A DNA stretch of 64,000 nt from the NCBI RefSeq assembly GCF_964204865.1, contig NC_135258.1, forward strand, positions 10,850,001 through 10,914,000. The letters run 5' to 3'. Source of the DNA: Styela clava. Lineage: Eukaryota. Positions 8,072 through 17,606 of the stretch are shown here, piece after piece. Below the pieces are notes generated by a model. The model did not search any database. It was not told the DNA's origin and saw nothing but the letters and a program-made list of their open reading frames with translations. The position numbers and the translations under genes are program-made. Positions within the stretch are counted from its first letter, which is position 1; every line of letters begins with the position of its first letter.

Positions 8072-10963
8072 CAGTGGCGGCGCGTGGTCATTTTGACAAC
8101 CGGGGCAAGCTACTGCGGGACCAAGTCACCCCCATCTACGGGGACAGGATGAGCGCTGTAAGTTCTCCCATCATTTTATGAGTATAAAAACCATTCCATC
8201 GGTAACAACCAATCGGCAAAAGCGACAATTTTTAACGATAAGAAAGTGTCTTTAAAATCGGTCCAAGTCAAGGGATTAATAAATATAGACATAGTTTATT
8301 TTGAAACCTCTTTCAAAAGGAAAGGCAATATTTACCCAGATAAATACAATGACATATTAACAGAAACTTCGGGAAAGCAGACAAAACCTAAAATAAGGTT
8401 TAAAACGTTACTATGAAGAAAGGAAAGTTAATGCAAAGATAAGGACATGCGTCGCTCACTCATAGATATATATGCTGGCAATGCTGCTAGACTTCTACTG
8501 CTTGAACATATATGCAACACGCCGCGGTTTCTTGGAAGCAAAATGCTCAATAACGCGCTGATTAAAGTCATGCATCCCAGAAATAACGTCTCTGTGAATG
8601 GATAAAACAGCCAAGGAATTTAATCTATCTTGCTTCATTGTGTTTCTGAGATACGTTTTAATACGCTTCAGCGTGCTGAATGTTCGCTCTGCGTCGGCGG
8701 AGAAATAGGCGTCGTCAAAATGATGTCCAGAAATTTAGTTTGATTGGTGTATATACATCGCAATTCATTTTTCAATTTACCCACGTTTATCATGGGGTAA
8801 AATATGGAGACAGTAGCCAACAAATGGATGGGAAATTGACGTGCAAATTTTGAAAAATTTTTGGGGTTTATCAAAGAGAACGCGGCAAGGTGTTCAGTGC
8901 GCAGACGATCGCCTATTTGATTCACCAGAATGTCACAGCATTCCTTCGCAGACAAAATCAAACGGCGCGGCGTAAAGAAGCACTCCATGTGTCGTCGTAT
9001 TTTATTGTTTCCCGGATACGAGATACAGCATCGCAGAAGTCTGAAATACACGACTGCACAGACGCTCCATTCATTAGCCTTGACTGCAATGCGCCGTATA
9101 ATACATCCACGTGATAGAATATTGTGGAGAAAAAAGCGAGAAAAAATCAAAACTCACCATCTTCGAGCAGACGCTTTAGACCTGCCGCCTCCCTCACAGA
9201 GCGTTCGTCCCAAACCGGAGAGCTCTGAATGCCATTGAAACACTCAATGAGCTCAGACCTAATTTCGGACACGCCCTGCACCACGCGTGATTGGAAGTTC
9301 CAACGTGTTGGTGCACAAGCTGGGAGACGGCGGCTACATATCTGGCGAAGGAGGTCAGAGCGCTTCGGCGAAACGGAAAAAAATGAAGAAAACCCCGAAA
9401 CATTTGCAAAAAATATACGGACGAGAGGGGTATCAAGACACATATTTTTAATAACGAGGTTAAATTGGTGTGCATAACAATGTAAAAAATGCGCATGAGG
9501 AAAATCTTCTTTTATATAAACTTGAACACCATGTTTCGACCCACTCATGACTGCCGCGCCGTCATAAGTTTGAGCTATCAATTTTGACTTCGCGTTGTAA
9601 GGCTGTAACACTTCTTTCAGTACAGTCGATATCCCGCAATCCGTGCGATCAACGATTGGTACAAAGCTGTGAAATCTCTCGGTAGGTTTACCATCTTTCA
9701 CGAACCGAAAAATCACAGCCAGTTGGGAAACGCACGTGATGTCAGTTGTCTCGTCAGACTGAATCGAAAGGAACTGGCAATTCTCAATTTCCAGAGCCAA
9801 ATGTTGTAAATAAATTTTATACATTGAGTCGAGCAAATCATTTTGGATATCCTTAGATGTCCCTTTCGAAACAGTTGCGGCATCAAGATGATCTCTCAAT
9901 ACTGTATCTAGGGATGTGGTGTATTCCACCATATCCAAAATCCCCCTCTATTAGAAGAGCCAGCCTGTTCATCGTGCCCACGGAGGGACAGCTCGTGACA
10001 ACCAATGAACTTCAAAACATCTATCAATCGACCGAGAACATGGCGGTTTTTCTCGACGTTTTGGTTGTGCCGACGAATAGAAACCGCGCGTCCTTCATCC
10101 AACTGTGCTGCAATATTAACATTTCCGAATGTTCGGTATTTTACTGCATTGTCCAGATGCTCCATAGAAGATTGATGATCCGTGGCACGCTCGGAAAGAT
10201 GTTTAAGATCTCTAAAACCAAATTTACACCAACGTGAGTCACGGGCGGTAGCAAAAAGTAGGCAATAAAAACAAAAAAGTGCATTTTTGTCCTCGCTGTA
10301 ACACAACCATTCGTGTTTTTTATATCAAGTTTCTGCGCAGAATGTACGCCGACGCTATGGGATTGTTCCAGTGAACAATTTTTTGGTTGATAAGGCCCAA
10401 GACGTTGTACCTCCAATTTTTGTTCCAGCGGCAGCTGCGAAAACGGAGTGCGAAGTAGTGCATCAACCTTATTCATTATGAGGTCTAAGGCTAAGAAATG
10501 CGAAGTCGGAAAGAAGTGAGGAGCTCAAAAGGAATGTGGAAAATCGAAAGCAAATGGACTAAAGGTCTCTAACTGATTCAAATAGCGAAACAAGCGACAA
10601 AAACGAAGGCGAGGAAACTATCAACTCTTCAAGCAACCAACGAACGAGAAGGAATGCGTGAATATGTCAACACGTTGTTGTAAGAAACGTCGGCATAGTG
10701 TCGTCATAATTTCGGGGCTAGCCCCGATGATTTAGTAAAAGAAACAGAAAACAAACGCGGCGAGTGGAAGATAAAAGAGAGAATACGATATACAATGAGC
10801 AACCGGGGCAAAATCGGCGTCGCCCCGTCGACGTTCGGCGAAGGCTTTGCGAGCGAAAAATGAACCATGTCGGGAGAATATGGCTAGTGTAGACAGTCTG
10901 TGCAACCGATATTGAGGTATTTTTCGAATATTTTTTTTCGGCCCTATTGACGCGCCGCCACTG
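8072..10963 (-). mobile_element. hAT DNA transposon (2892 bp; ZMYM1/DUF4371-type transposase)
   Basis: Perfect 14-bp TIRs CAGTGGCGGCGCGT (8072-8085) / ACGCGCCGCCACTG (10950-10963). Perfect 8-bp TSD gtaaaatc (8064-8071, 10964-10971). Internal transposase remnants. Visibly more GC/CpG-rich than the flanks. Confidence 0.95.
8495..10476 (-). pseudogene. Disrupted hAT transposase
   Basis: Pieces in different frames: TTF-type Zn-finger region (LFCFYCLLF...W..GF...H..S..H), LRGHDE, SIQSDETTD, QTYDGAAVMSG, HCYAHQFNL, TRW and hATC tail ADAERTFSTLKRIKTYLRNTMKQDRLNSLAVLSIH...MFKQ* (TAG 8497-8495). Frameshifts near 10350, 9940, 8965 and 8700; in-frame TGA at 9149-9147. Confidence 0.92.
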
Positions 10964-11262: not shown

Positions 11263-11673
11263 ATTTCACGCAACTAGTTTGATACTCGCCAGAAGATGAC
11301 AGTCCTAACAAGCGGTGAAAAATGCATTGGGCGTACAACACGCATTGAGCAGAGGTACAACACTGGGTATACAGTAAAGTCAACAGCAAGATTTATACTT
11401 TGAGCAAACTCAACCATATCGATATCTGCATATTTTTATTGAATTCTATCGCGGAATCTTGTTCAGTCTCCTGACATTTTGTTCTATATCCGTTTACAAA
11501 AGAAGTATTACAAAATTTTATTATGCGCACAAAAATTTAATTCGAACTATTTTGGCCTATCACATTGCCATGCCATGTAGGCAACATCCAACAGAAGCAC
11601 CAGATCAATTGATCATGCCAATTTCACATCGGCTTTCCATAACACCTAATCATCATTGGAATTGGCTATCTGT

Positions 11674-14600
11674 TCAAGTGTTTGAGTTGGAAGCAGGTAA
11701 CTGCCAAGGTTCATCATCATCAGATGATGAATCGTCGTTTTCATTTTGAATTTTCTGGAAAATATTTGAATTCCACAGTGAAAGAAAGAAATGAAATCTA
11801 GCTGATACAGATCACATTAAATACCCTTTTTCAGAAAAAAGACTATACCAGGTGTTAGCATTCCTAACTAGGCTAACTACTGTACAATAAACTTAGGTAG
11901 TAATATTGAATAATGCTGCATGAGACATTCACAAATTCATTCTGTTATATTCCTGGCCAAAACACCCATAATTTGTAAAACAAATGTGAACTGCTTGTCT
12001 GAGAAATTCTGGGTTCAGTCATAAAAACATTACAGCATAAAATTTGTTAAAAGTTTAATTTAACCTTTGAACCACAAAGCTATAGCTGCTTTGATTTTTA
12101 TCACAGTATCCTTGCCACTAGTGCAATATGGGTGCACCTACACAAAGGCATAGAGCAGAAACGGTACTCCTGAAGTATGCGCATCAAGATGTCGCACAAC
12201 CTGAACCCTAAACTGGTACACAACCGGAGTTCAGGTTGTGCGCCATCTTGGTGGGCATACTTCAGGAAGTCCGCAGAAACAGTAGTTAGGAACACACCAC
12301 CACATTCAATCACTGCTGAGTAAATTCAAAATTAGTTTACCATTCTTAAAAAATCAACTAGTTTTGTTGCGTCTTCACCGCGACTTAAATCTAGGAAATC
12401 TTGTGGCATTCTATAACTCAGCGTTTCACTTGGTTGCATTGTTGCATCTCTCTTAGCAAATCTGAACATTCCAATGGGTTCACCATCTAAAAATAAAACA
12501 ATGTTTTTTCTGACTAAACTGTTCGATTTTATTTATGTGCACATGACCTTGTATCCAGCAAATTCTTATGAAAAATACAATAATATACCTGGTGTAATAA
12601 TGGGACAATCTTCTTCAGTTAATTGTGATTGCACAAAAGAGTTCAATTCTTCCCATGTAAACAGTAATGAATCTGTCATTGAACCCCAAGGATTAAAATC
12701 AATTATCCAGAATTTTCCCTGAAACAAGAAAAATGTTGTTTGTAGGTCATTAAGTGAGCACATTCGACAGTTTACTATGAAACAATAAAATGGGTCTGGT
12801 TCATTACTGAGAAAATAACAGCAAAACATAGAAAGCAATTGCAAACACAACTAGAGTTAGTAAATGAATGAATTTAACCTAAATTCTTAATCAACCTAAG
12901 TCTAGTCATCAAGGTAAAAAGCATAAGCTATATGTCCGCCATCTTGGTTCACATACTTCGGGAATACCATATTTCCTATATTACATCATGATCATCTAAT
13001 TTACCAATTCAGAAATCCGAAACTGAAAAATATATTTTCTAAGAACAATGATCTAGTTAAATCTATTAATACTCACATCTCTCTTCTTGTAGATGTCAAC
13101 AACATCTAAAAAAAATTGGGTTATTCAGTACTTTTGAATCATTAAAATAACACAGGTACTAGAGAGAATAGTAATGTAAAATTTTGCCAATGGTTATGGC
13201 ATATTGGCATTCTCTAATCCTTCATGAGATTCAGATTTGTAGCACTCACACAAAGTGATCATTGGTTTAATAATGATTGTCAAGTCTGTAACATAATAAA
13301 TCATTTTTAGACACTTTATATTTCATTCAATCATTTTCTTTTACAAGATACTCACAATTAGAATTATTAAATTTATGTTGAATTTTTTCTTGAAAAAATC
13401 TGCAAATTTCTACAGGTAAAGACTGTTGTTGGCTTTCAACATATTCATAATATTGTTGATGATGTCTCTGACACGCAGCAATGAGTTTGTGGTTTCGTAC
13501 AAAACATCTGAATTCCATTCCAGGTACTAAGTTTGCCCATTTCCTCAAAACCAACTGAAAATATTTAATAAATCTGATAAGAAAAAAGATACGGTTTTAT
13601 TTTGGATCACATTTTCATAAATTTTATTTTGTATTGTTCCATCTGACCAAAGGCAGACTTCCTCAGACAAACAGTTTACAATAATGATAAAAAAAAAAGA
13701 ACAATTATAGGATGCATTATACATGCATGATATTTATGACAATATTTGCTGATATCAATATTCCGATGCTTGGAAATTGCTGATTTGATGCTGATGCTGA
13801 AATTGTTAATCTAATTTAATAATCAGATTATTAAAATTTGACATCCTTGCAGTGGGAACATGATTTATGTCAATATCATGTAATATAAATCTCAATAAAA
13901 TATTCTAATTTAAATTGAATAAAATTCCAGAAAACATACAATTCGGGTGTGAACATCCCTTCTGGCGGAAAGAACGACATATATATAATTTTGAACAAAT
14001 TATAAAAGATTAAAATCTTACTTCTTTCTGGAATTGTGGATCTGGTATTGAATCATCAGTACATAGTTTAAATGGAGATGTCAAATCGTAAGTGATGAAG
14101 TCGGAACTTTTCATAAGTAAAATGATGTCACCTGATAAAACAATAAATATAGAAAAGAATTCAATTTCACGAAGCAGTATTTTGAACTCTAATTTCTGAT
14201 ATTTGGACACACTTTAAAAAATATATTGCTGTACGAAGATTGTTTATAATTATTAAACAAATGAGCAAGGTGATTCGAGTGCATCATAGGAATAAATCGA
14301 ACAGATTCTAATTGATAGTTCCTCTTTGATGTAATAATATTTGTGTCGGCATGATACGCAATCAGTGAAAAGTTTGAAAATATTTTCAACAACAATTAAC
14401 ATTAACTGCCCAAGTTTTGGCATCAGGCATTCTGTAACAAGCAGAAGCAAAAATGCTAGTAGTAAGCCTCATCTATGTTGGCAATAATGGCTAAGGGTCA
14501 ATCAGGACCATTGTCCTCAGACAGAATGTAACAAGGAAGTAGCCAAACCTAGTTTCAAGTTTTTCCAGACATAGTGGTGTATTCAATAACAACCCTATTT

Positions 14601-16695
14601 CATGAAAAGGGTATAAAAACATAAAGTCACCTGGAGTGTTACACTTCAAACTATTATTCGATGTTATCCAAATAGCATCTTTGGGTGAACTCCAATTCAA
14701 TTTTGGAAATGATTTCCAATTTAATTTCTCTAAAACTTCTTTGATTTGTTCCAGAAGAGCAGTGAATTGAGGTGCCTGTAAACAACAATTGTCTTCTTCA
14801 ATTGCTTCTCCATAAGTATATAAACCACAATCCAATATTTCCAAGCAAAAATATTGCAATCCCAGTACTGGTATATTTTGAAATAGGTATATAATATATA
14901 CATATACCAGAATTTTTTTGTAATAAATCTTCTGAATTAGTAAGTTAGGATAATTATGAATCCATTTTTTCAAATTATGACTGAATTTGGCGTCCCTACA
15001 AAGGCAAGAATATCACAGATTCGAAATCTTAGAAAATCTTCAAACCTCATTTTCATTTTGTGTTTCGTCTTCATCTGACCAATTTTCATTATCATCGAAA
15101 TTACTTTGTATACTTAAATCAGCACCTTTTGGTAATATCAATGGACCATCTTTTTGCAAATATTCAACAAAATCATCCGGCAATGGTATAATAAAGCTAA
15201 AAAACAAAAATCCACAAATGACAGCCATCGATTATTAAACACATTTGAAGTGAACAATTACAGTTCTTCAACATATTCAGTATTAAGAGTTCAATAGCCT
15301 GAAAATTATGAATTTCAATCTAATAGTTAAATTATATTAGGAAATTTAGTGTTATTTACTGATATATGTCAAAAACTAATTTACATTGCATCTAGTATAA
15401 ATCAAATTCACTATATAATTTAAAAGAATCCTCGAAAAATAAATCAAAGAACTGTTGAATTCAAATTAATACGAGAGATTAAAAAGCGATAAATGTAAGC
15501 AAAAAATAGATGAATATTTGTTAAATCGAAATAAAAAGATCATATGTTTTCCTCTGTTGCTGGGCCACAAACTCCGTCAGAAAATTCAGTGCCATCTTCA
15601 GATGGCCACCACATTGGAATATGACATCGAAATTTTAGCTGACCATCTTTTGAAGAAAGTGTCTCTCCTGAGTAGTTCAGTCTCACTAATGCAAGACCTA
15701 CTTTACCATCAGAATGCATTGATCGAAACTTTCCTGCACTTTTTCTCTTCTCTGTGTATATTGAAGACCCAGATTCAATAGATCCTTCTCCTTCTATGCT
15801 CACAGGAACAAGTCGTTTTCTAATGACACCGGTGAATTTGGTACGAGCTGTGAGCTCTTGACCAATATAACATCCTTTATGAAAGCTGACACCATTCATA
15901 AAATCAAGATTGCATTCCAAGGGCAGACAAGTTCCAGGTGGCAAATCTAACGGACCCTCTGGAACACCAATGTAATGTCTTTTATGATGATATGCATTAA
16001 TATCCATGTTAATTAATGCAGAGTCACTTTCTGACATATTTTCAACCACCAGTCTATGCCCGAGCATTGGGACCCTCGGGTCAATGGCAGAAGTGACTAC
16101 ATTGCTGAACTGTGGAGAAATATGAAAAGAATTTCCAGACATTGCCTGCACCACCGATAGATTATCTCTGGGTGTAATACTCAGTTTTTTTCTCAGTTTA
16201 TATAATTTTAAAATTTTAATGATACTTTCGGAATTTGACGACTCACATTCAAGAAGGACTTTGTTTTCTGTGTCGTGTTGTTGATGATATAACATAATAT
16301 CATGCATAATGCGTCCATGTTGGTTTAAAATCATTGCATACATGCATTTCATTTCAGGGAGAAGTTCAACGTCATTGGTTATAATCCCTTGTAAAAAATT
16401 GGTAACATCCCGTCCTTCGAGTTCAAGTAAACTCCGATGTTTCAAATGAGCATATCTGACATTATCCTGATCCTTGTCAACAATATGCATATGCCTTGCA
16501 CTAGACAGCATTTTTGATTTCGAACAGAACCGCGGAAAGATACGTCGTAATAGTGTAACTCTTGACATAGCCAAAGACATTTTAAATAAAATAAGATTTC
16601 ATCAACTCCTACCTTTTTATTGTGATGTCTGAAAATTGTGAATACCATTTTGAGAACATGCAATTCATCACATGTTCTTTTGTTAATGTTGTCAT
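11674..16695 (-). CDS. CDC123: Cell division cycle protein 123 (eIF2 assembly ATP-grasp protein), 9 exons, 357 aa
   Basis: Exons 16695-16613 (MTTLTKEHVMNCMFSKWYSQFSDITIK, missed by the ORF track), 15196-15046, 14775-14631, 14131-14022, 13554-13356, 13105-13077, 12718-12589, 12486-12341, 11754-11674. All GT-AG and in phase. Family motifs FPKLNWSSPKDA, KSSDFI, LVLRKW..L.PGMEFRCFV, IDFNPWG..TDSLLFTWEEL. Confidence 0.95.
12163..12272. mobile_element. GG-terminal hairpin MITE (family A, short form)
   Basis: GGTACTCCTGAAGTATG...CATACTTCAGGAAGTCC, nearly palindromic. Perfect TSD gcagaaac (12155-12162, 12273-12280). Same subfamily as 54531-54643. Confidence 0.85.
12932..12968. mobile_element. Solo terminal arm of MITE family A
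   Basis: ATGTCCGCCATCTTGGTTCACATACTTCGGGAATACC is near-identical to the right TIR of 22562-22796. Confidence 0.7.
15540..16580 (-). CDS. IBA57: Mitochondrial Fe-S cluster assembly factor IBA57 (CAF17/YgfZ family), intronless, nested in CDC123 intron 1
   Basis: 346-aa single-exon ORF. Arg-rich mitochondrial-presequence-like N-terminus, R..L.LEG.D...FLQGIITND, DPR, GVSFHKGCYIGQELTART family signature. Confidence 0.95.
   Translation of the reverse strand: MSLAMSRVTLLRRIFPRFCSKSKMLSSARHMHIVDKDQDNVRYAHLKHRSLLELEGRDVTNFLQGIITNDVELLPEMKCMYAMILNQHGRIMHDIMLYHQQHDTENKVLLECESSNSESIIKILKLYKLRKKLSITPRDNLSVVQAMSGNSFHISPQFSNVVTSAIDPRVPMLGHRLVVENMSESDSALINMDINAYHHKRHYIGVPEGPLDLPPGTCLPLECNLDFMNGVSFHKGCYIGQELTARTKFTGVIRKRLVPVSIEGEGSIESGSSIYTEKRKSAGKFRSMHSDGKVGLALVRLNYSGETLSSKDGQLKFRCHIPMWWPSEDGTEFSDGVCGPATEENI
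16581..16635 (-). promoter_or_regulatory. Candidate IBA57 leader: exonic acceptor TTTTCAG|(16628), CDC123 donor (16612) and 6-codon uORF (16602-16582)
   Basis: Minus strand reads caattttcAG|acatcacaataaaaag|GTaggagttg ATGaaatcttattttattTAA a ATG(IBA57). The motifs are seen; the function is inferred. Confidence 0.45.
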
Positions 16696-17606
16696 ATTGT
16701 AGTATTGTTGAGTTTCAAATTTTGAGGAAGTTTAAGTATACCTTAATACCAGTCAATCAATAATTTTTCTAAAAAAAGTTTTGTAATCTCATGTTTATAT
16801 TGACTTCAACAATCCATATTTAAAAAAAAAGATATGACTTTATTGGCAAAACTAATATATAATAAAATACAGAATATGAAAGTTCTTCATGACCACTAAC
16901 AGACTACTAGAATTGCATGAACAAGAGGACAAGAGTAAAACTGTAAAATGAGACAGGCATGGTGAAAATAGATACCTGGATCTAAAGAAGCGAGTGCCTT
17001 GACGATTACGCCCCTATCCAGTTATCTGTAAATATAGTAAAGATAGTTGGGCACAATATGTCTATCTCTCAGTCCTCCATGCAGACGCAGTGATGTAAGA
17101 AAGCAATCTGGTATTTTTGTATTTCATTATTTGTCAAACAAGTATTACTGTATTAACATTCTTGAATATCTGTCTGAGCGAAACAAGTGTCTGAGTGGCC
17201 TCACTAACTTTACAGCTTTAATTGTTACGTCAATCTGTCAATATTAACTCATTGCCGATAGGCCATTAGGTATTACTGCATTACGGAAAGAAACATGGAA
17301 ATTGATGCTCGTGGAAACATCCATAGCTTCCTTCACCATCAGATCCTAATTCAGTACGGTACCGGTAGGCTACCGTATTTTCACGCTCCTGGCAATGCAA
17401 ACAAAAACTCAGTCAAAAGGAAAAATTTGTCTCAATTATTGAGTTTATATCTGAGTTATGCAAGTAAAATAAAAAATTAACATAAGCTGCGGCAGACGGG
17501 TCCAAGGACACTTGCAACAACATCGTGATCTTTAAATTTTGTGTCTTACCCGACATCTCTTTCAATTCCAAATATAGGCCATCCATACAAAGGTACATAT
17601 GGTCTT

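What the first reader, a model, noticed from the sequence alone, without database searches (positions are those of the whole stretch)
15197..16695. Intronless IBA57 nested on the same strand in CDC123 intron 1, only 32 nt after the splice donor
Seen: CDC123 exon 1 (16695-16613) splices in frame (IK-S-FIIPLP) to exon 2 at 15196. The 1416-nt intron between them is about 73% filled by a complete 346-aa IBA57 ORF in the same orientation. There is no room for a separate promoter between the donor (16612) and the IBA57 ATG (16580). If the intron is kept, the CDC123 frame stops at once (AAA AGG TAG, 16611-16609). Known: nested genes are usually antisense, vertebrate IBA57 has introns, and the two proteins are unrelated (eIF2 assembly versus mitochondrial [4Fe-4S] maturation). 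Inference: an IBA57 retrocopy captured the CDC123 promoter, so one transcription unit yields either protein in a mutually exclusive way.
Basis: partly seen in the sequence, partly recalled or inferred. Interest (0 to 1): 0.88.

Follow-up and report, generated by a model that had tools for sequence, protein, structure and literature searches.

The report
IBA57 gene inside CDC123's first intron
In the sea squirt Styela clava, the only copy of the mitochondrial gene IBA57 sits, without introns and on the same strand, inside the first intron of CDC123, and RNA data show both are expressed, probably from one promoter: a neat but not unprecedented variant of tunicate operons and promoter-sharing nested genes.

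Summary
The window is Styela clava. RNA contigs from three studies join CDC123 exon 1 (ends 16613) to exon 2 (starts 15196), skipping 1416 nt. A DNA run does not show this joint. The intron holds an intact 346-aa IBA57/CAF17 ORF (16580-15540), which is the only copy in the genome. CDC123 mRNA carries a spliced leader (SL) at acceptor AG 16770-16769; that leader occurs 428 times in the genome. IBA57 RNA contigs are colinear with the genome. In two of three runs they cross the CDC123 donor and end exactly 30 nt (k-1) into exon 1. Contigs also cover the intron tail toward the exon-2 acceptor, and no AATAAA lies there, as in upstream cistrons of Ciona operons.

Best reading (about 0.55): one promoter, and each primary transcript gives either CDC123 (spliced) or IBA57 (unspliced, 3' end formed in the intron). 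The 5' end of IBA57 mRNA is not resolved. Upstream ATGs, one of them overlapping the IBA57 start, argue against a productive mRNA that keeps the whole of exon 1. They favour an alternative SL acceptor at 16630-16629 or a start site within exon 1.

Retrocopy origin is unproven: no poly(A), duplication or SL relic was found. First readers of this scan flagged similar same-strand nested intronless genes elsewhere in this genome. Interest is moderate.

The parts
16769..16770 (-). SL trans-splice acceptor AG of CDC123; the mature exon starts at 16768
   Evidence: The X6 CDC123 contig matches up to 16770, then carries 20 loose letters. Their reverse complement plus AG is TGGAGTATTTGGTTGTATTAAG. That string followed by GT occurs 428 times in the genome and 0 times in the reversed control, including a 1634-bp tandem array. 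The block is invariant across diverged copies.
16613..16768 (-). CDC123 exon 1: 5'UTR 16768-16696, coding 16695-16613 (27 codons plus 2 nt)
   Evidence: match to the human CDC123 N-terminus, E 4.8e-4.
16629..16630 (-). Candidate alternative SL acceptor (TTCACAATTTTCAG|ACATCA) inside exon 1, just after the last harmful upstream ATG (16648)
   Evidence: Sequence only. Its use is not shown: no SL letters hang on any IBA57 contig.
15197..16612 (-). CDC123 intron 1, 1416 nt, GT..AG
   Evidence: The joint is seen in three RNA runs and not in the DNA run.
16581..16612 (-). 32-nt spacer between donor and IBA57 ATG. It holds the TAG (16611-16609) that ends the exon-1 frame, and a 6-codon mini-ORF (ATG 16602, weak context, stop 16584-16582)
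15540..16580 (-). IBA57/CAF17 ORF: 346 aa, intronless, the only copy in the genome
   Evidence: (99% identical to the annotated Styela clava protein). RNA contigs lie at X1 15487-16642, X5 15379-16642 and X6 15227-16611. Of 8 SNPs among runs, 5 are synonymous.
15199..15539 (-). Tail of intron 1, the likely IBA57 3'UTR, running toward the exon-2 acceptor. It has no AATAAA or ATTAAA; AGTAAA lies at 15360 and AATAAT at 15236
   Evidence: RNA contigs lie over it in all three runs (X1 15199-15412, X5 15169-15307 and 15379 onward, X6 from 15227). The other CDC123 introns carry almost none outside repeats. Hexamer scan.
15046..15196 (-). CDC123 exon 2
14631..14775 (-). CDC123 exon 3
14022..14131 (-). 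CDC123 exon 4
13356..13554 (-). CDC123 exon 5
13077..13105 (-). CDC123 exon 6 (29 nt)
   Evidence: The two letters 'between' at this joint are a synonymous GGA>GGG change at 12716.
12589..12718 (-). CDC123 exon 7
12341..12486 (-). CDC123 exon 8
11674..11754 (-). CDC123 exon 9, coding part (stop TGA 11676-11674). The 3'UTR runs on, with ATTAAA at 11541 and AATAAA at 11522

Best explanation
This is one compact transcription unit of Styela clava that carries two unrelated essential genes.

Shown:
- CDC123 mRNA is made by SL trans-splicing at 16768 and by cis-splicing of exon 1 to exon 2. This removes a 1416-nt intron.
- That intron contains the genome's only IBA57 gene, intact, intronless and on the same strand.
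- IBA57-bearing RNA is colinear with the genome, crosses the unused CDC123 donor into exon 1, and extends through the intron tail toward the exon-2 acceptor.

Inferred:
- Both RNAs come from the promoter upstream of 16770.
- Each primary transcript has one of two fates. Either the 16612 donor is spliced to 15197, giving CDC123 mRNA while IBA57 is discarded in the lariat. Or the donor is left unused and a 3' end is formed in the intron tail at a weak, non-canonical site, giving IBA57 mRNA and no CDC123.
- The productive IBA57 mRNA most likely does not keep the CDC123 start codons. My preferred route is SL trans-splicing at the second acceptor, AG 16630-16629. That would leave only a weak 6-codon mini-ORF before the IBA57 ATG.

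In effect the locus is an upstream cistron of a tunicate operon placed in the first intron of the downstream gene rather than in its outron. The downstream gene therefore receives a cis exon instead of the leader at the boundary acceptor.
For: - Organism and gene identities.
- Single copy.
- All eight CDC123 introns are spliced in three RNA runs and none in the DNA run.
- SL at the CDC123 5' end. The leader is a 428-copy genomic element with a GT donor.
- The contig graph branches only at intron 1. The X5 CDC123 contig runs through seven other junctions unbroken.
- The IBA57 contigs of X1 and X5 end at 16642, exactly k-1 = 30 nt into exon 1. So reads bridging exon 1 into the intron exist.
- RNA contigs cover the intron tail, whereas other introns are nearly empty.
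- No AATAAA or ATTAAA lies downstream of IBA57. In Ciona, 16 of 18 operon upstream cistrons lack the signal, poly(A) is added at the acceptor AG of the next cistron, and either/or use of a transcript was proposed (PMC1488885).
- 60% of 5'-most genes of Ciona operons are single-exon (PMC2760879).
- RNA depth upstream of 16819 is about zero, so no upstream cistron abuts the unit.
- The upstream ATG map argues against a productive mRNA with the full exon 1.
Against: - No read-level evidence places the 5' end of IBA57 mRNA. No SL letters hang on any IBA57 contig.
- In X6 the IBA57 contig stops at 16611, 1 nt inside the intron, with no link to exon 1. None of my models predicts that end exactly.
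- The bridging k-mers in X1 and X5 could come from unspliced precursor alone.
- Assembly software may clip short SL tips (from my memory of how the assembler behind Logan's contigs works, not checked here), so their absence is uninformative either way.
- A TATAAA at 16799 and a start site within exon 1 remain possible.
- The 3' end of IBA57 mRNA is not mapped.
Confidence: 0.55

Rival explanations
1. IBA57 has its own start site inside CDC123 exon 1 or its 5'UTR (between about 16700 and 16642). It is driven by core-promoter elements that overlap the CDC123 5' end. The two genes overlap but are separate transcription units, and IBA57 mRNA is not trans-spliced.
For: - IBA57 contigs reach at least 16642 but are never seen joined to SL or to the far part of exon 1.
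- TATA-like hexamers lie at 16799 and 16861.
- About half of Ciona genes are not trans-spliced (PMC1488885).
- Specific VAChT promoters lie within ChAT intron 1 in the closest known analogue (cited in PMC3053374).
Against: - A start upstream of 16648 would put a strong-context, out-of-frame ATG, whose ORF overlaps the IBA57 start, into the mRNA. The productive window for a start site is therefore only about 16647-16642 if the contig ends are taken at face value.
- The promoter would have to sit in the CDC123 5'UTR and coding exon.
- Other same-strand nested intronless genes flagged in this genome suggest a general, promoter-free way of expression (unchecked notes).
Confidence: 0.3
2. This is the first reader's literal model, a sub-case of the shared promoter. 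IBA57 mRNA is SL plus the whole of exon 1 plus the retained intron. IBA57 is translated by reinitiation after the 28-codon exon-1 ORF, which stops at 16611-16609, 28 nt before the IBA57 ATG.
For: - Contigs are colinear from IBA57 into exon 1 (X1, X5).
- The exon-1 frame stops immediately in the intron.
- Short upstream ORFs can allow reinitiation (general knowledge).
Against: - Four ATGs lie at 16695-16659, and a strong-context ATG at 16648 opens an ORF that runs past the IBA57 ATG to 16442.
- The reinitiation gap is only 28 nt, with another ATG 6 nt after the stop.
- This would be a very poor template for an essential single-copy gene.
Confidence: 0.18
3. The colinear RNA is only unspliced CDC123 precursor or excised lariat, and the nested IBA57 is silent or a pseudogene.
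For: The X6 contig (15227-16611) nearly coincides with the intron from its second base to about 30 nt before the acceptor. This is roughly what a lariat would give.
Against: - It is the only IBA57 in 377 Mb.
- The ORF is intact, with every invariant family residue, including the KGCYIGQE cysteine.
- Most SNPs are synonymous.
- The other seven introns leave almost no contigs in the same runs.
- X1 and X5 contigs extend into exon 1, which a lariat cannot do.
Confidence: 0.03

Closest known systems
Ciona-type SL-resolved operons without intercistronic DNA (Satou et al. 2006, PMC1488885; 2008, PMC2760879)
   Same: A tunicate with one spliced leader. The single-exon gene lies upstream of a multi-exon gene on one strand. 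The upstream cistron lacks AATAAA, and its RNA runs up to the acceptor of the next gene. Either/or use of each primary transcript was proposed there too.
   Different: In Ciona the boundary acceptor receives the leader. [quoted passage not shown] The 'downstream' gene thus brackets the 'upstream' one. By the papers' own definition (adjacent genes less than 100 bp apart, downstream gene SL trans-spliced) this locus would not be counted.
Cholinergic gene locus: VAChT in the first intron of ChAT (PMC3053374 and references there)
   Same: The whole ORF of the nested gene lies in one exon, in the first intron of the host, in the same orientation. The 5' region is shared and alternative RNA processing gives one or the other mRNA. 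The arrangement is conserved from nematodes to mammals.
   Different: There the shared exon is non-coding and the two proteins act in one pathway, and VAChT-specific promoters in the intron are also known. Here the shared exon carries the CDC123 start codon and 27 codons, the proteins are unrelated (eIF2 assembly versus mitochondrial 4Fe-4S maturation, from general knowledge), and SL trans-splicing is available.
Promoter and 5'-exon sharing by distinct human genes, for example CPNE1/RBM12 and more than 20 other pairs (PMC2568002)
   Same: Two unrelated coding sequences are expressed from one promoter and common 5' exons through alternative splicing and polyadenylation.
   Different: Those shared exons are untranslated. 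Sharing is not yet proven here.
C. elegans SL1-type operons (as discussed in PMC1488885)
   Same: [quoted passage not shown] 3'-end formation of the upstream gene and splicing at the next acceptor exclude each other.
   Different: Those have canonical AATAAA in the upstream cistrons and no bracketing cis exon.

Membership tests
IBA57/CAF17 (mitochondrial Fe-S assembly factor) | GCV_T folate-binding-type domain plus CAF17 C-terminal barrel, above the Pfam cut-offs | tested here: met
   PF01571 37.1 bits (cut-off 25.6) and PF25455 54.4 bits (cut-off 25.7). Human IBA57 6qe4 E 3.9e-50.
IBA57/CAF17 (mitochondrial Fe-S assembly factor) | Conserved KGCYxGQE motif with the cysteine | tested here: met
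   K235 G236 C237 Y238 G240 Q241 E242 are invariant in 14 sequences and aligned to the human motif.
IBA57/CAF17 (mitochondrial Fe-S assembly factor) | N-terminal mitochondrial presequence | not testable with these tools
   The first 34 residues are rich in R, K and S and have no acidic residue. No predictor was available.
CDC123 / D123 | D123 domain across the spliced exons, and the conserved N-terminus | tested here: met
   Exons 2, 3, 4, 5 and 7 hit PF07065 at profile positions 14-64, 70-116, 118-148, 155-219 and 232-257. Exon 1 matches human CDC123 8phd residues 21-44, E 4.8e-4. The joined protein was not searched.
Ciona-type SL operon | The organism and this unit use SL trans-splicing | tested here: met
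Ciona-type SL operon | The downstream cistron's 5' end is made by SL trans-splicing at the cistron boundary | tested here: not met
   The boundary acceptor (15197) is joined in cis to exon 1 in all three RNA runs. No SL loose end at 15196 appears among the ends listed (104 ends were not shown).
Ciona-type SL operon | [quoted passage not shown] | tested here: inconclusive
   RNA contigs reach 15199 (X1), 15227 (X6) and 15169 (X5), but contigs cannot show poly(A) sites.
Ciona-type SL operon | A single promoter and a polycistronic precursor | tested here: inconclusive
   Colinear exon 1-intron contigs in X1 and X5. The start site is not mapped.
Promoter-sharing nested pair (cholinergic-locus type) | [quoted passage not shown] | tested here: met
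Promoter-sharing nested pair (cholinergic-locus type) | Shared promoter and 5' exon | tested here: inconclusive
   (at least 30 nt of exon 1 on IBA57 contigs in 2 of 3 runs).
Processed retrogene | Intronless copy of a gene that has introns in relatives | tested here: inconclusive
   It is intronless here. Two Clavelina models differ by an internal 30-aa block, which suggests introns there. No relative's gene structure could be fetched.
Processed retrogene | Poly(A) relic, flanking target-site duplication, or SL relic at the 5' edge | tested here: not met
   There is no A-run of 6 or more after the stop. The only flanking repeat (15 nt, 14/15 identical) would enclose the conserved end of exon 1. 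SL against the leader scores no better than shuffles (4909 of 5000 shuffles reach it).

The most novel reading that the evidence does not exclude
Same-strand, intronless genes embedded in introns are a regular, so far uncounted class of tunicate polycistronic unit. Intronless copies that land in RNA destined to be discarded (outron or intron) are expressed from the host promoter, because weak 3'-end signals and SL trans-splicing let one transcript serve either gene. Such 'operons inside introns' would escape the adjacency-based operon definitions used for Ciona. [quoted passage not shown]
Probability: 0.3. Interest if true: 0.6.

Novelty: new variant of a known kind. Interest (0 to 1): 0.4.

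Why it matters
If the promoter is shared, the ratio of an eIF2-assembly factor to a mitochondrial Fe-S maturation factor is set after transcription starts. It would depend on the competition between one 5' splice site and a weak intronic 3'-end site, and perhaps on the choice between two leader acceptors 140 nt apart. That makes a compact natural system for studying how splicing, polyadenylation and SL trans-splicing compete in a chordate. It also shows that adjacency-based operon counts in tunicates miss bracketed units of this kind. The arrangement as such is not unprecedented: VAChT/ChAT, CPNE1/RBM12 and Ciona operons are close analogues.

Tried and rejected
The Logan transcript contigs of relatives (P0002-P0007) and the genomic contexts in other tunicates (P0009-P0015) could therefore not be read, and conservation of the nesting is untested.
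- Two metagenome scans were run. With P0008 as query, nothing was confirmed. With alignment A1, 80 loci were kept, all at 38% identity or less and none tunicate. None has CDC123 exons beside IBA57.
- (protein 2) and 22 used a wrong frame for exon 1, so their blanks mean nothing. They were redone in frame.
- Searches failed on frame errors, and on a strand rule.
- Rfam found no RNA family in 11400-17600.
- Retrocopy hallmarks were not found: no poly(A) relic, no credible target-site duplication and no SL relic before the ATG.
- SL acceptors at AG 16610-16609 or 16607-16606, and a lariat, were considered to explain the X6 contig end at 16611. None fits exactly.
- Misassembly is rejected, because DNA and RNA contigs are colinear.
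- An upstream cistron abutting 16770 is rejected, because RNA depth at 16819-17400 is about zero.
- Depth figures were not used to rank the two genes, as the tool warns.
- The joined CDC123 protein was not sent to any search tool. Exons were joined only inside a script, to count length and stops and to classify SNPs.
Full report
**What is there**

The window is from Styela clava. The 346-aa ORF at 16580..15540 (minus strand) is 99% identical to the protein annotated there as 'putative transferase CAF17 homolog, mitochondrial'. The window maps to contig C10 of a 377-Mb assembly.

The ORF has the GCV_T and CAF17 C-terminal Pfam domains above cut-off. It matches the solved human IBA57 at E 4e-50, including the KGCYIGQE motif. 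It keeps every column that is invariant in an alignment of 14 chordate relatives. A six-frame search of the whole genome finds this one copy only. Among eight SNPs seen between sequencing runs, five are synonymous. This is the working IBA57 gene of the animal.

**The host gene**

On the same strand I built a nine-exon CDC123 gene:
- exon 1: 16768-16613
- exon 2: 15196-15046
- exon 3: 14775-14631
- exon 4: 14131-14022
- exon 5: 13554-13356
- exon 6: 13105-13077
- exon 7: 12718-12589
- exon 8: 12486-12341
- exon 9: 11754-11674

The CDS is 1074 nt with one terminal stop. Searched exon by exon, exons 2-5 and 7 hit Pfam D123 in order; the 9-codon exon 6 was not scanned. The 27-codon exon-1 peptide matches the N-terminus of human and fission-yeast CDC123. 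I did not search the joined protein.

**RNA evidence**

Logan contigs of three runs from three studies behave as RNA. All eight introns are skipped with GT..AG ends, while a DNA run shows none of these joints. The joint 16613^15196, skipping 1416 nt, is in all three.

In run X6 the CDC123 contig runs to 16770 and then carries 20 letters that are not in the window. Read on the minus strand and followed by the acceptor's AG, they give TGGAGTATTTGGTTGTATTAAG. That string followed by GT occurs 428 times in the genome and never in the reversed control, including a tandem array of 1634-bp units. The block TTGGAGTATTTGGTTGTATTAAG|GT is invariant across copies whose flanks have diverged. This is the spliced leader of the species, and CDC123 mRNA is SL trans-spliced at 16768. 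RNA is almost absent from 16819 to 17400, so no upstream cistron abuts the unit.

**The IBA57 RNA**

Each RNA run has a long contig over the whole ORF, colinear with the genome: X1 15487-16642, X5 15379-16642 and X6 15227-16611.

Two of them cross the unused CDC123 donor and end exactly 30 nt into exon 1. This is the k-1 overlap expected where a de Bruijn graph (k = 31) branches between the spliced and the unspliced path. So molecules reading from exon 1 straight into the intron exist.

The graph branches only at intron 1. The X5 CDC123 contig runs unbroken through the other seven junctions. Contigs also lie over the 340-nt tail between the IBA57 stop and the exon-2 acceptor in all three runs, whereas the other introns carry almost none outside repeats.

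That tail has no AATAAA or ATTAAA. In Ciona, upstream cistrons of operons mostly lack the signal. Their poly(A) is added at the AG of the next cistron's acceptor, and the authors proposed that a given transcript yields either the upstream or the downstream mRNA (PMC1488885). Single-exon genes are the majority of 5'-most operon genes there, for reasons called unclear (PMC2760879).

**How it most likely works**

I read the locus as one promoter upstream of 16770 and two exclusive fates per transcript. In one fate, the 16612 donor is spliced to 15197, which gives CDC123 and discards IBA57 in the lariat. In the other, the donor is left unused and a 3' end forms in the intron tail, which gives IBA57.

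The splice, the leader on CDC123 and the colinear IBA57 RNA are shown. The shared promoter and the exclusivity are inferred.

The 5' end of the productive IBA57 mRNA is not resolved. An mRNA that kept all of exon 1 would carry several upstream ATGs:
- ATGs at 16695, 16673, 16668 and 16659.
- An ATG at 16648 in a strong context, whose out-of-frame ORF runs past the IBA57 ATG to 16442.
- A weak six-codon mini-ORF at 16602, which remains in any version of the mRNA.

Directly after the 16648 ATG lies a good acceptor, TTCACAATTTTCAG at 16630-16629. Leader addition there would leave only the weak 16602 mini-ORF. This is my preferred route, and it matches another first-reader note on this window (s1-812150). 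No contig shows it, however, and short leader tips may be clipped during assembly, so their absence does not decide the matter (this rests on my memory of the assembler, not on a check). A start site within exon 1 is the main rival.

The end of the X6 contig at 16611, one base inside the intron, is unexplained.

**Origin**

A retrocopy origin is possible but unsupported. There is no poly(A) relic and no leader relic before the ATG. The only flanking repeat (15 nt, 14/15 identical) would enclose the conserved end of exon 1, so it cannot be a target-site duplication.

**Comparison and novelty**

The locus works like a Ciona operon but fails one defining feature: the boundary acceptor takes a cis exon, not the leader.

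It has the anatomy of the cholinergic gene locus, where the single-exon VAChT lies in ChAT intron 1 (PMC3053374). It also resembles human promoter-sharing pairs such as CPNE1/RBM12 (PMC2568002). It differs from both in that the shared exon is coding and the proteins are unrelated.

No paper in the library links IBA57 and CDC123 in this way, or pairs Styela clava with a spliced leader.

First readers of this scan flagged several other same-strand intronless nested genes in this genome. I checked one at sequence level. ARV1 is an intronless ORF that starts about 58 nt after a donor of a B3GALT-like exon, and there it has its own acceptor. So this locus is probably one member of a recurrent class, which is more interesting than the single case.

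**Verdict**

This is a new variant of known kinds, of moderate interest.

Noticed in passing
G000:C8:4.23-4.58 Mb (tandem array); loci L002-L009; window 16768-16770: The spliced leader of Styela clava can be read off. The block TTGGAGTATTTGGTTGTATTAAG|GT is invariant and occurs 428 times in the genome, many copies in a tandem array with a 1634-bp period. No paper in the library pairs 'Styela clava' with 'spliced leader'.
   Followed up: partly
window 15540-15596 (C-terminus of IBA57); proteins P0002-P0007: The window's IBA57 and six unnamed relatives (44-57% identity) share a tail after the family's usual WWP end, DG[TS][EK]FS[DN]G[VI]C[GS]. It is absent from the other tunicate and amphioxus sequences. 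An extra conserved cysteine in an Fe-S factor might matter.
   Followed up: no
window 12091-12287 and 12879-13075: Very high-copy repeats lie inside CDC123 introns 8 and 6. DNA word depth is about 55,000-67,000 against about 12 nearby, and they are also abundant in the RNA runs. They share a '..CCAAGATGGCG..' core in opposite orientations.
   Followed up: no
window 8668-10476 (minus strand): Broken hAT/ZMYM-like transposase ORFs (263, 160, 132 and 111 aa, in different frames) lie just downstream of CDC123, in a stretch of raised GC (0.40-0.43). This is my reading of the translations; it was not searched.
   Followed up: no
L090 1372-2360 (G000:C4:14210734-14211363): ARV1 is an intronless 255-aa ORF on the same strand as a B3GALT-like exon. 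It starts about 58 nt after that exon's GTGAGT donor and has its own TTGTTGTTTTAG acceptor 19 nt before the ATG. It is a second example of a same-strand gene wedged behind a host donor.
   Followed up: partly
window 15228-15197: An ATG at 15228 in the tail of intron 1 reads MAVICGFLFF in frame into CDC123 exon 2 (the 62-aa ORF). It is probably chance, and no RNA evidence supports such a start.
   Followed up: no
window 16629-16643 and 15299-15313: A 15-nt near-repeat, ATTCAyAATTTTCAG on the minus strand, occurs at the candidate acceptor inside exon 1 and again in the intron tail 100 nt before the exon-2 acceptor. About 0.2 such pairs are expected by chance by my estimate.
   Followed up: partly
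window 16611 (run X6): The IBA57 RNA contig of X6 ends exactly one base inside intron 1 and 30 nt before the exon-2 acceptor (15227), unlike those of X1 and X5. This is unexplained.
   Followed up: partly
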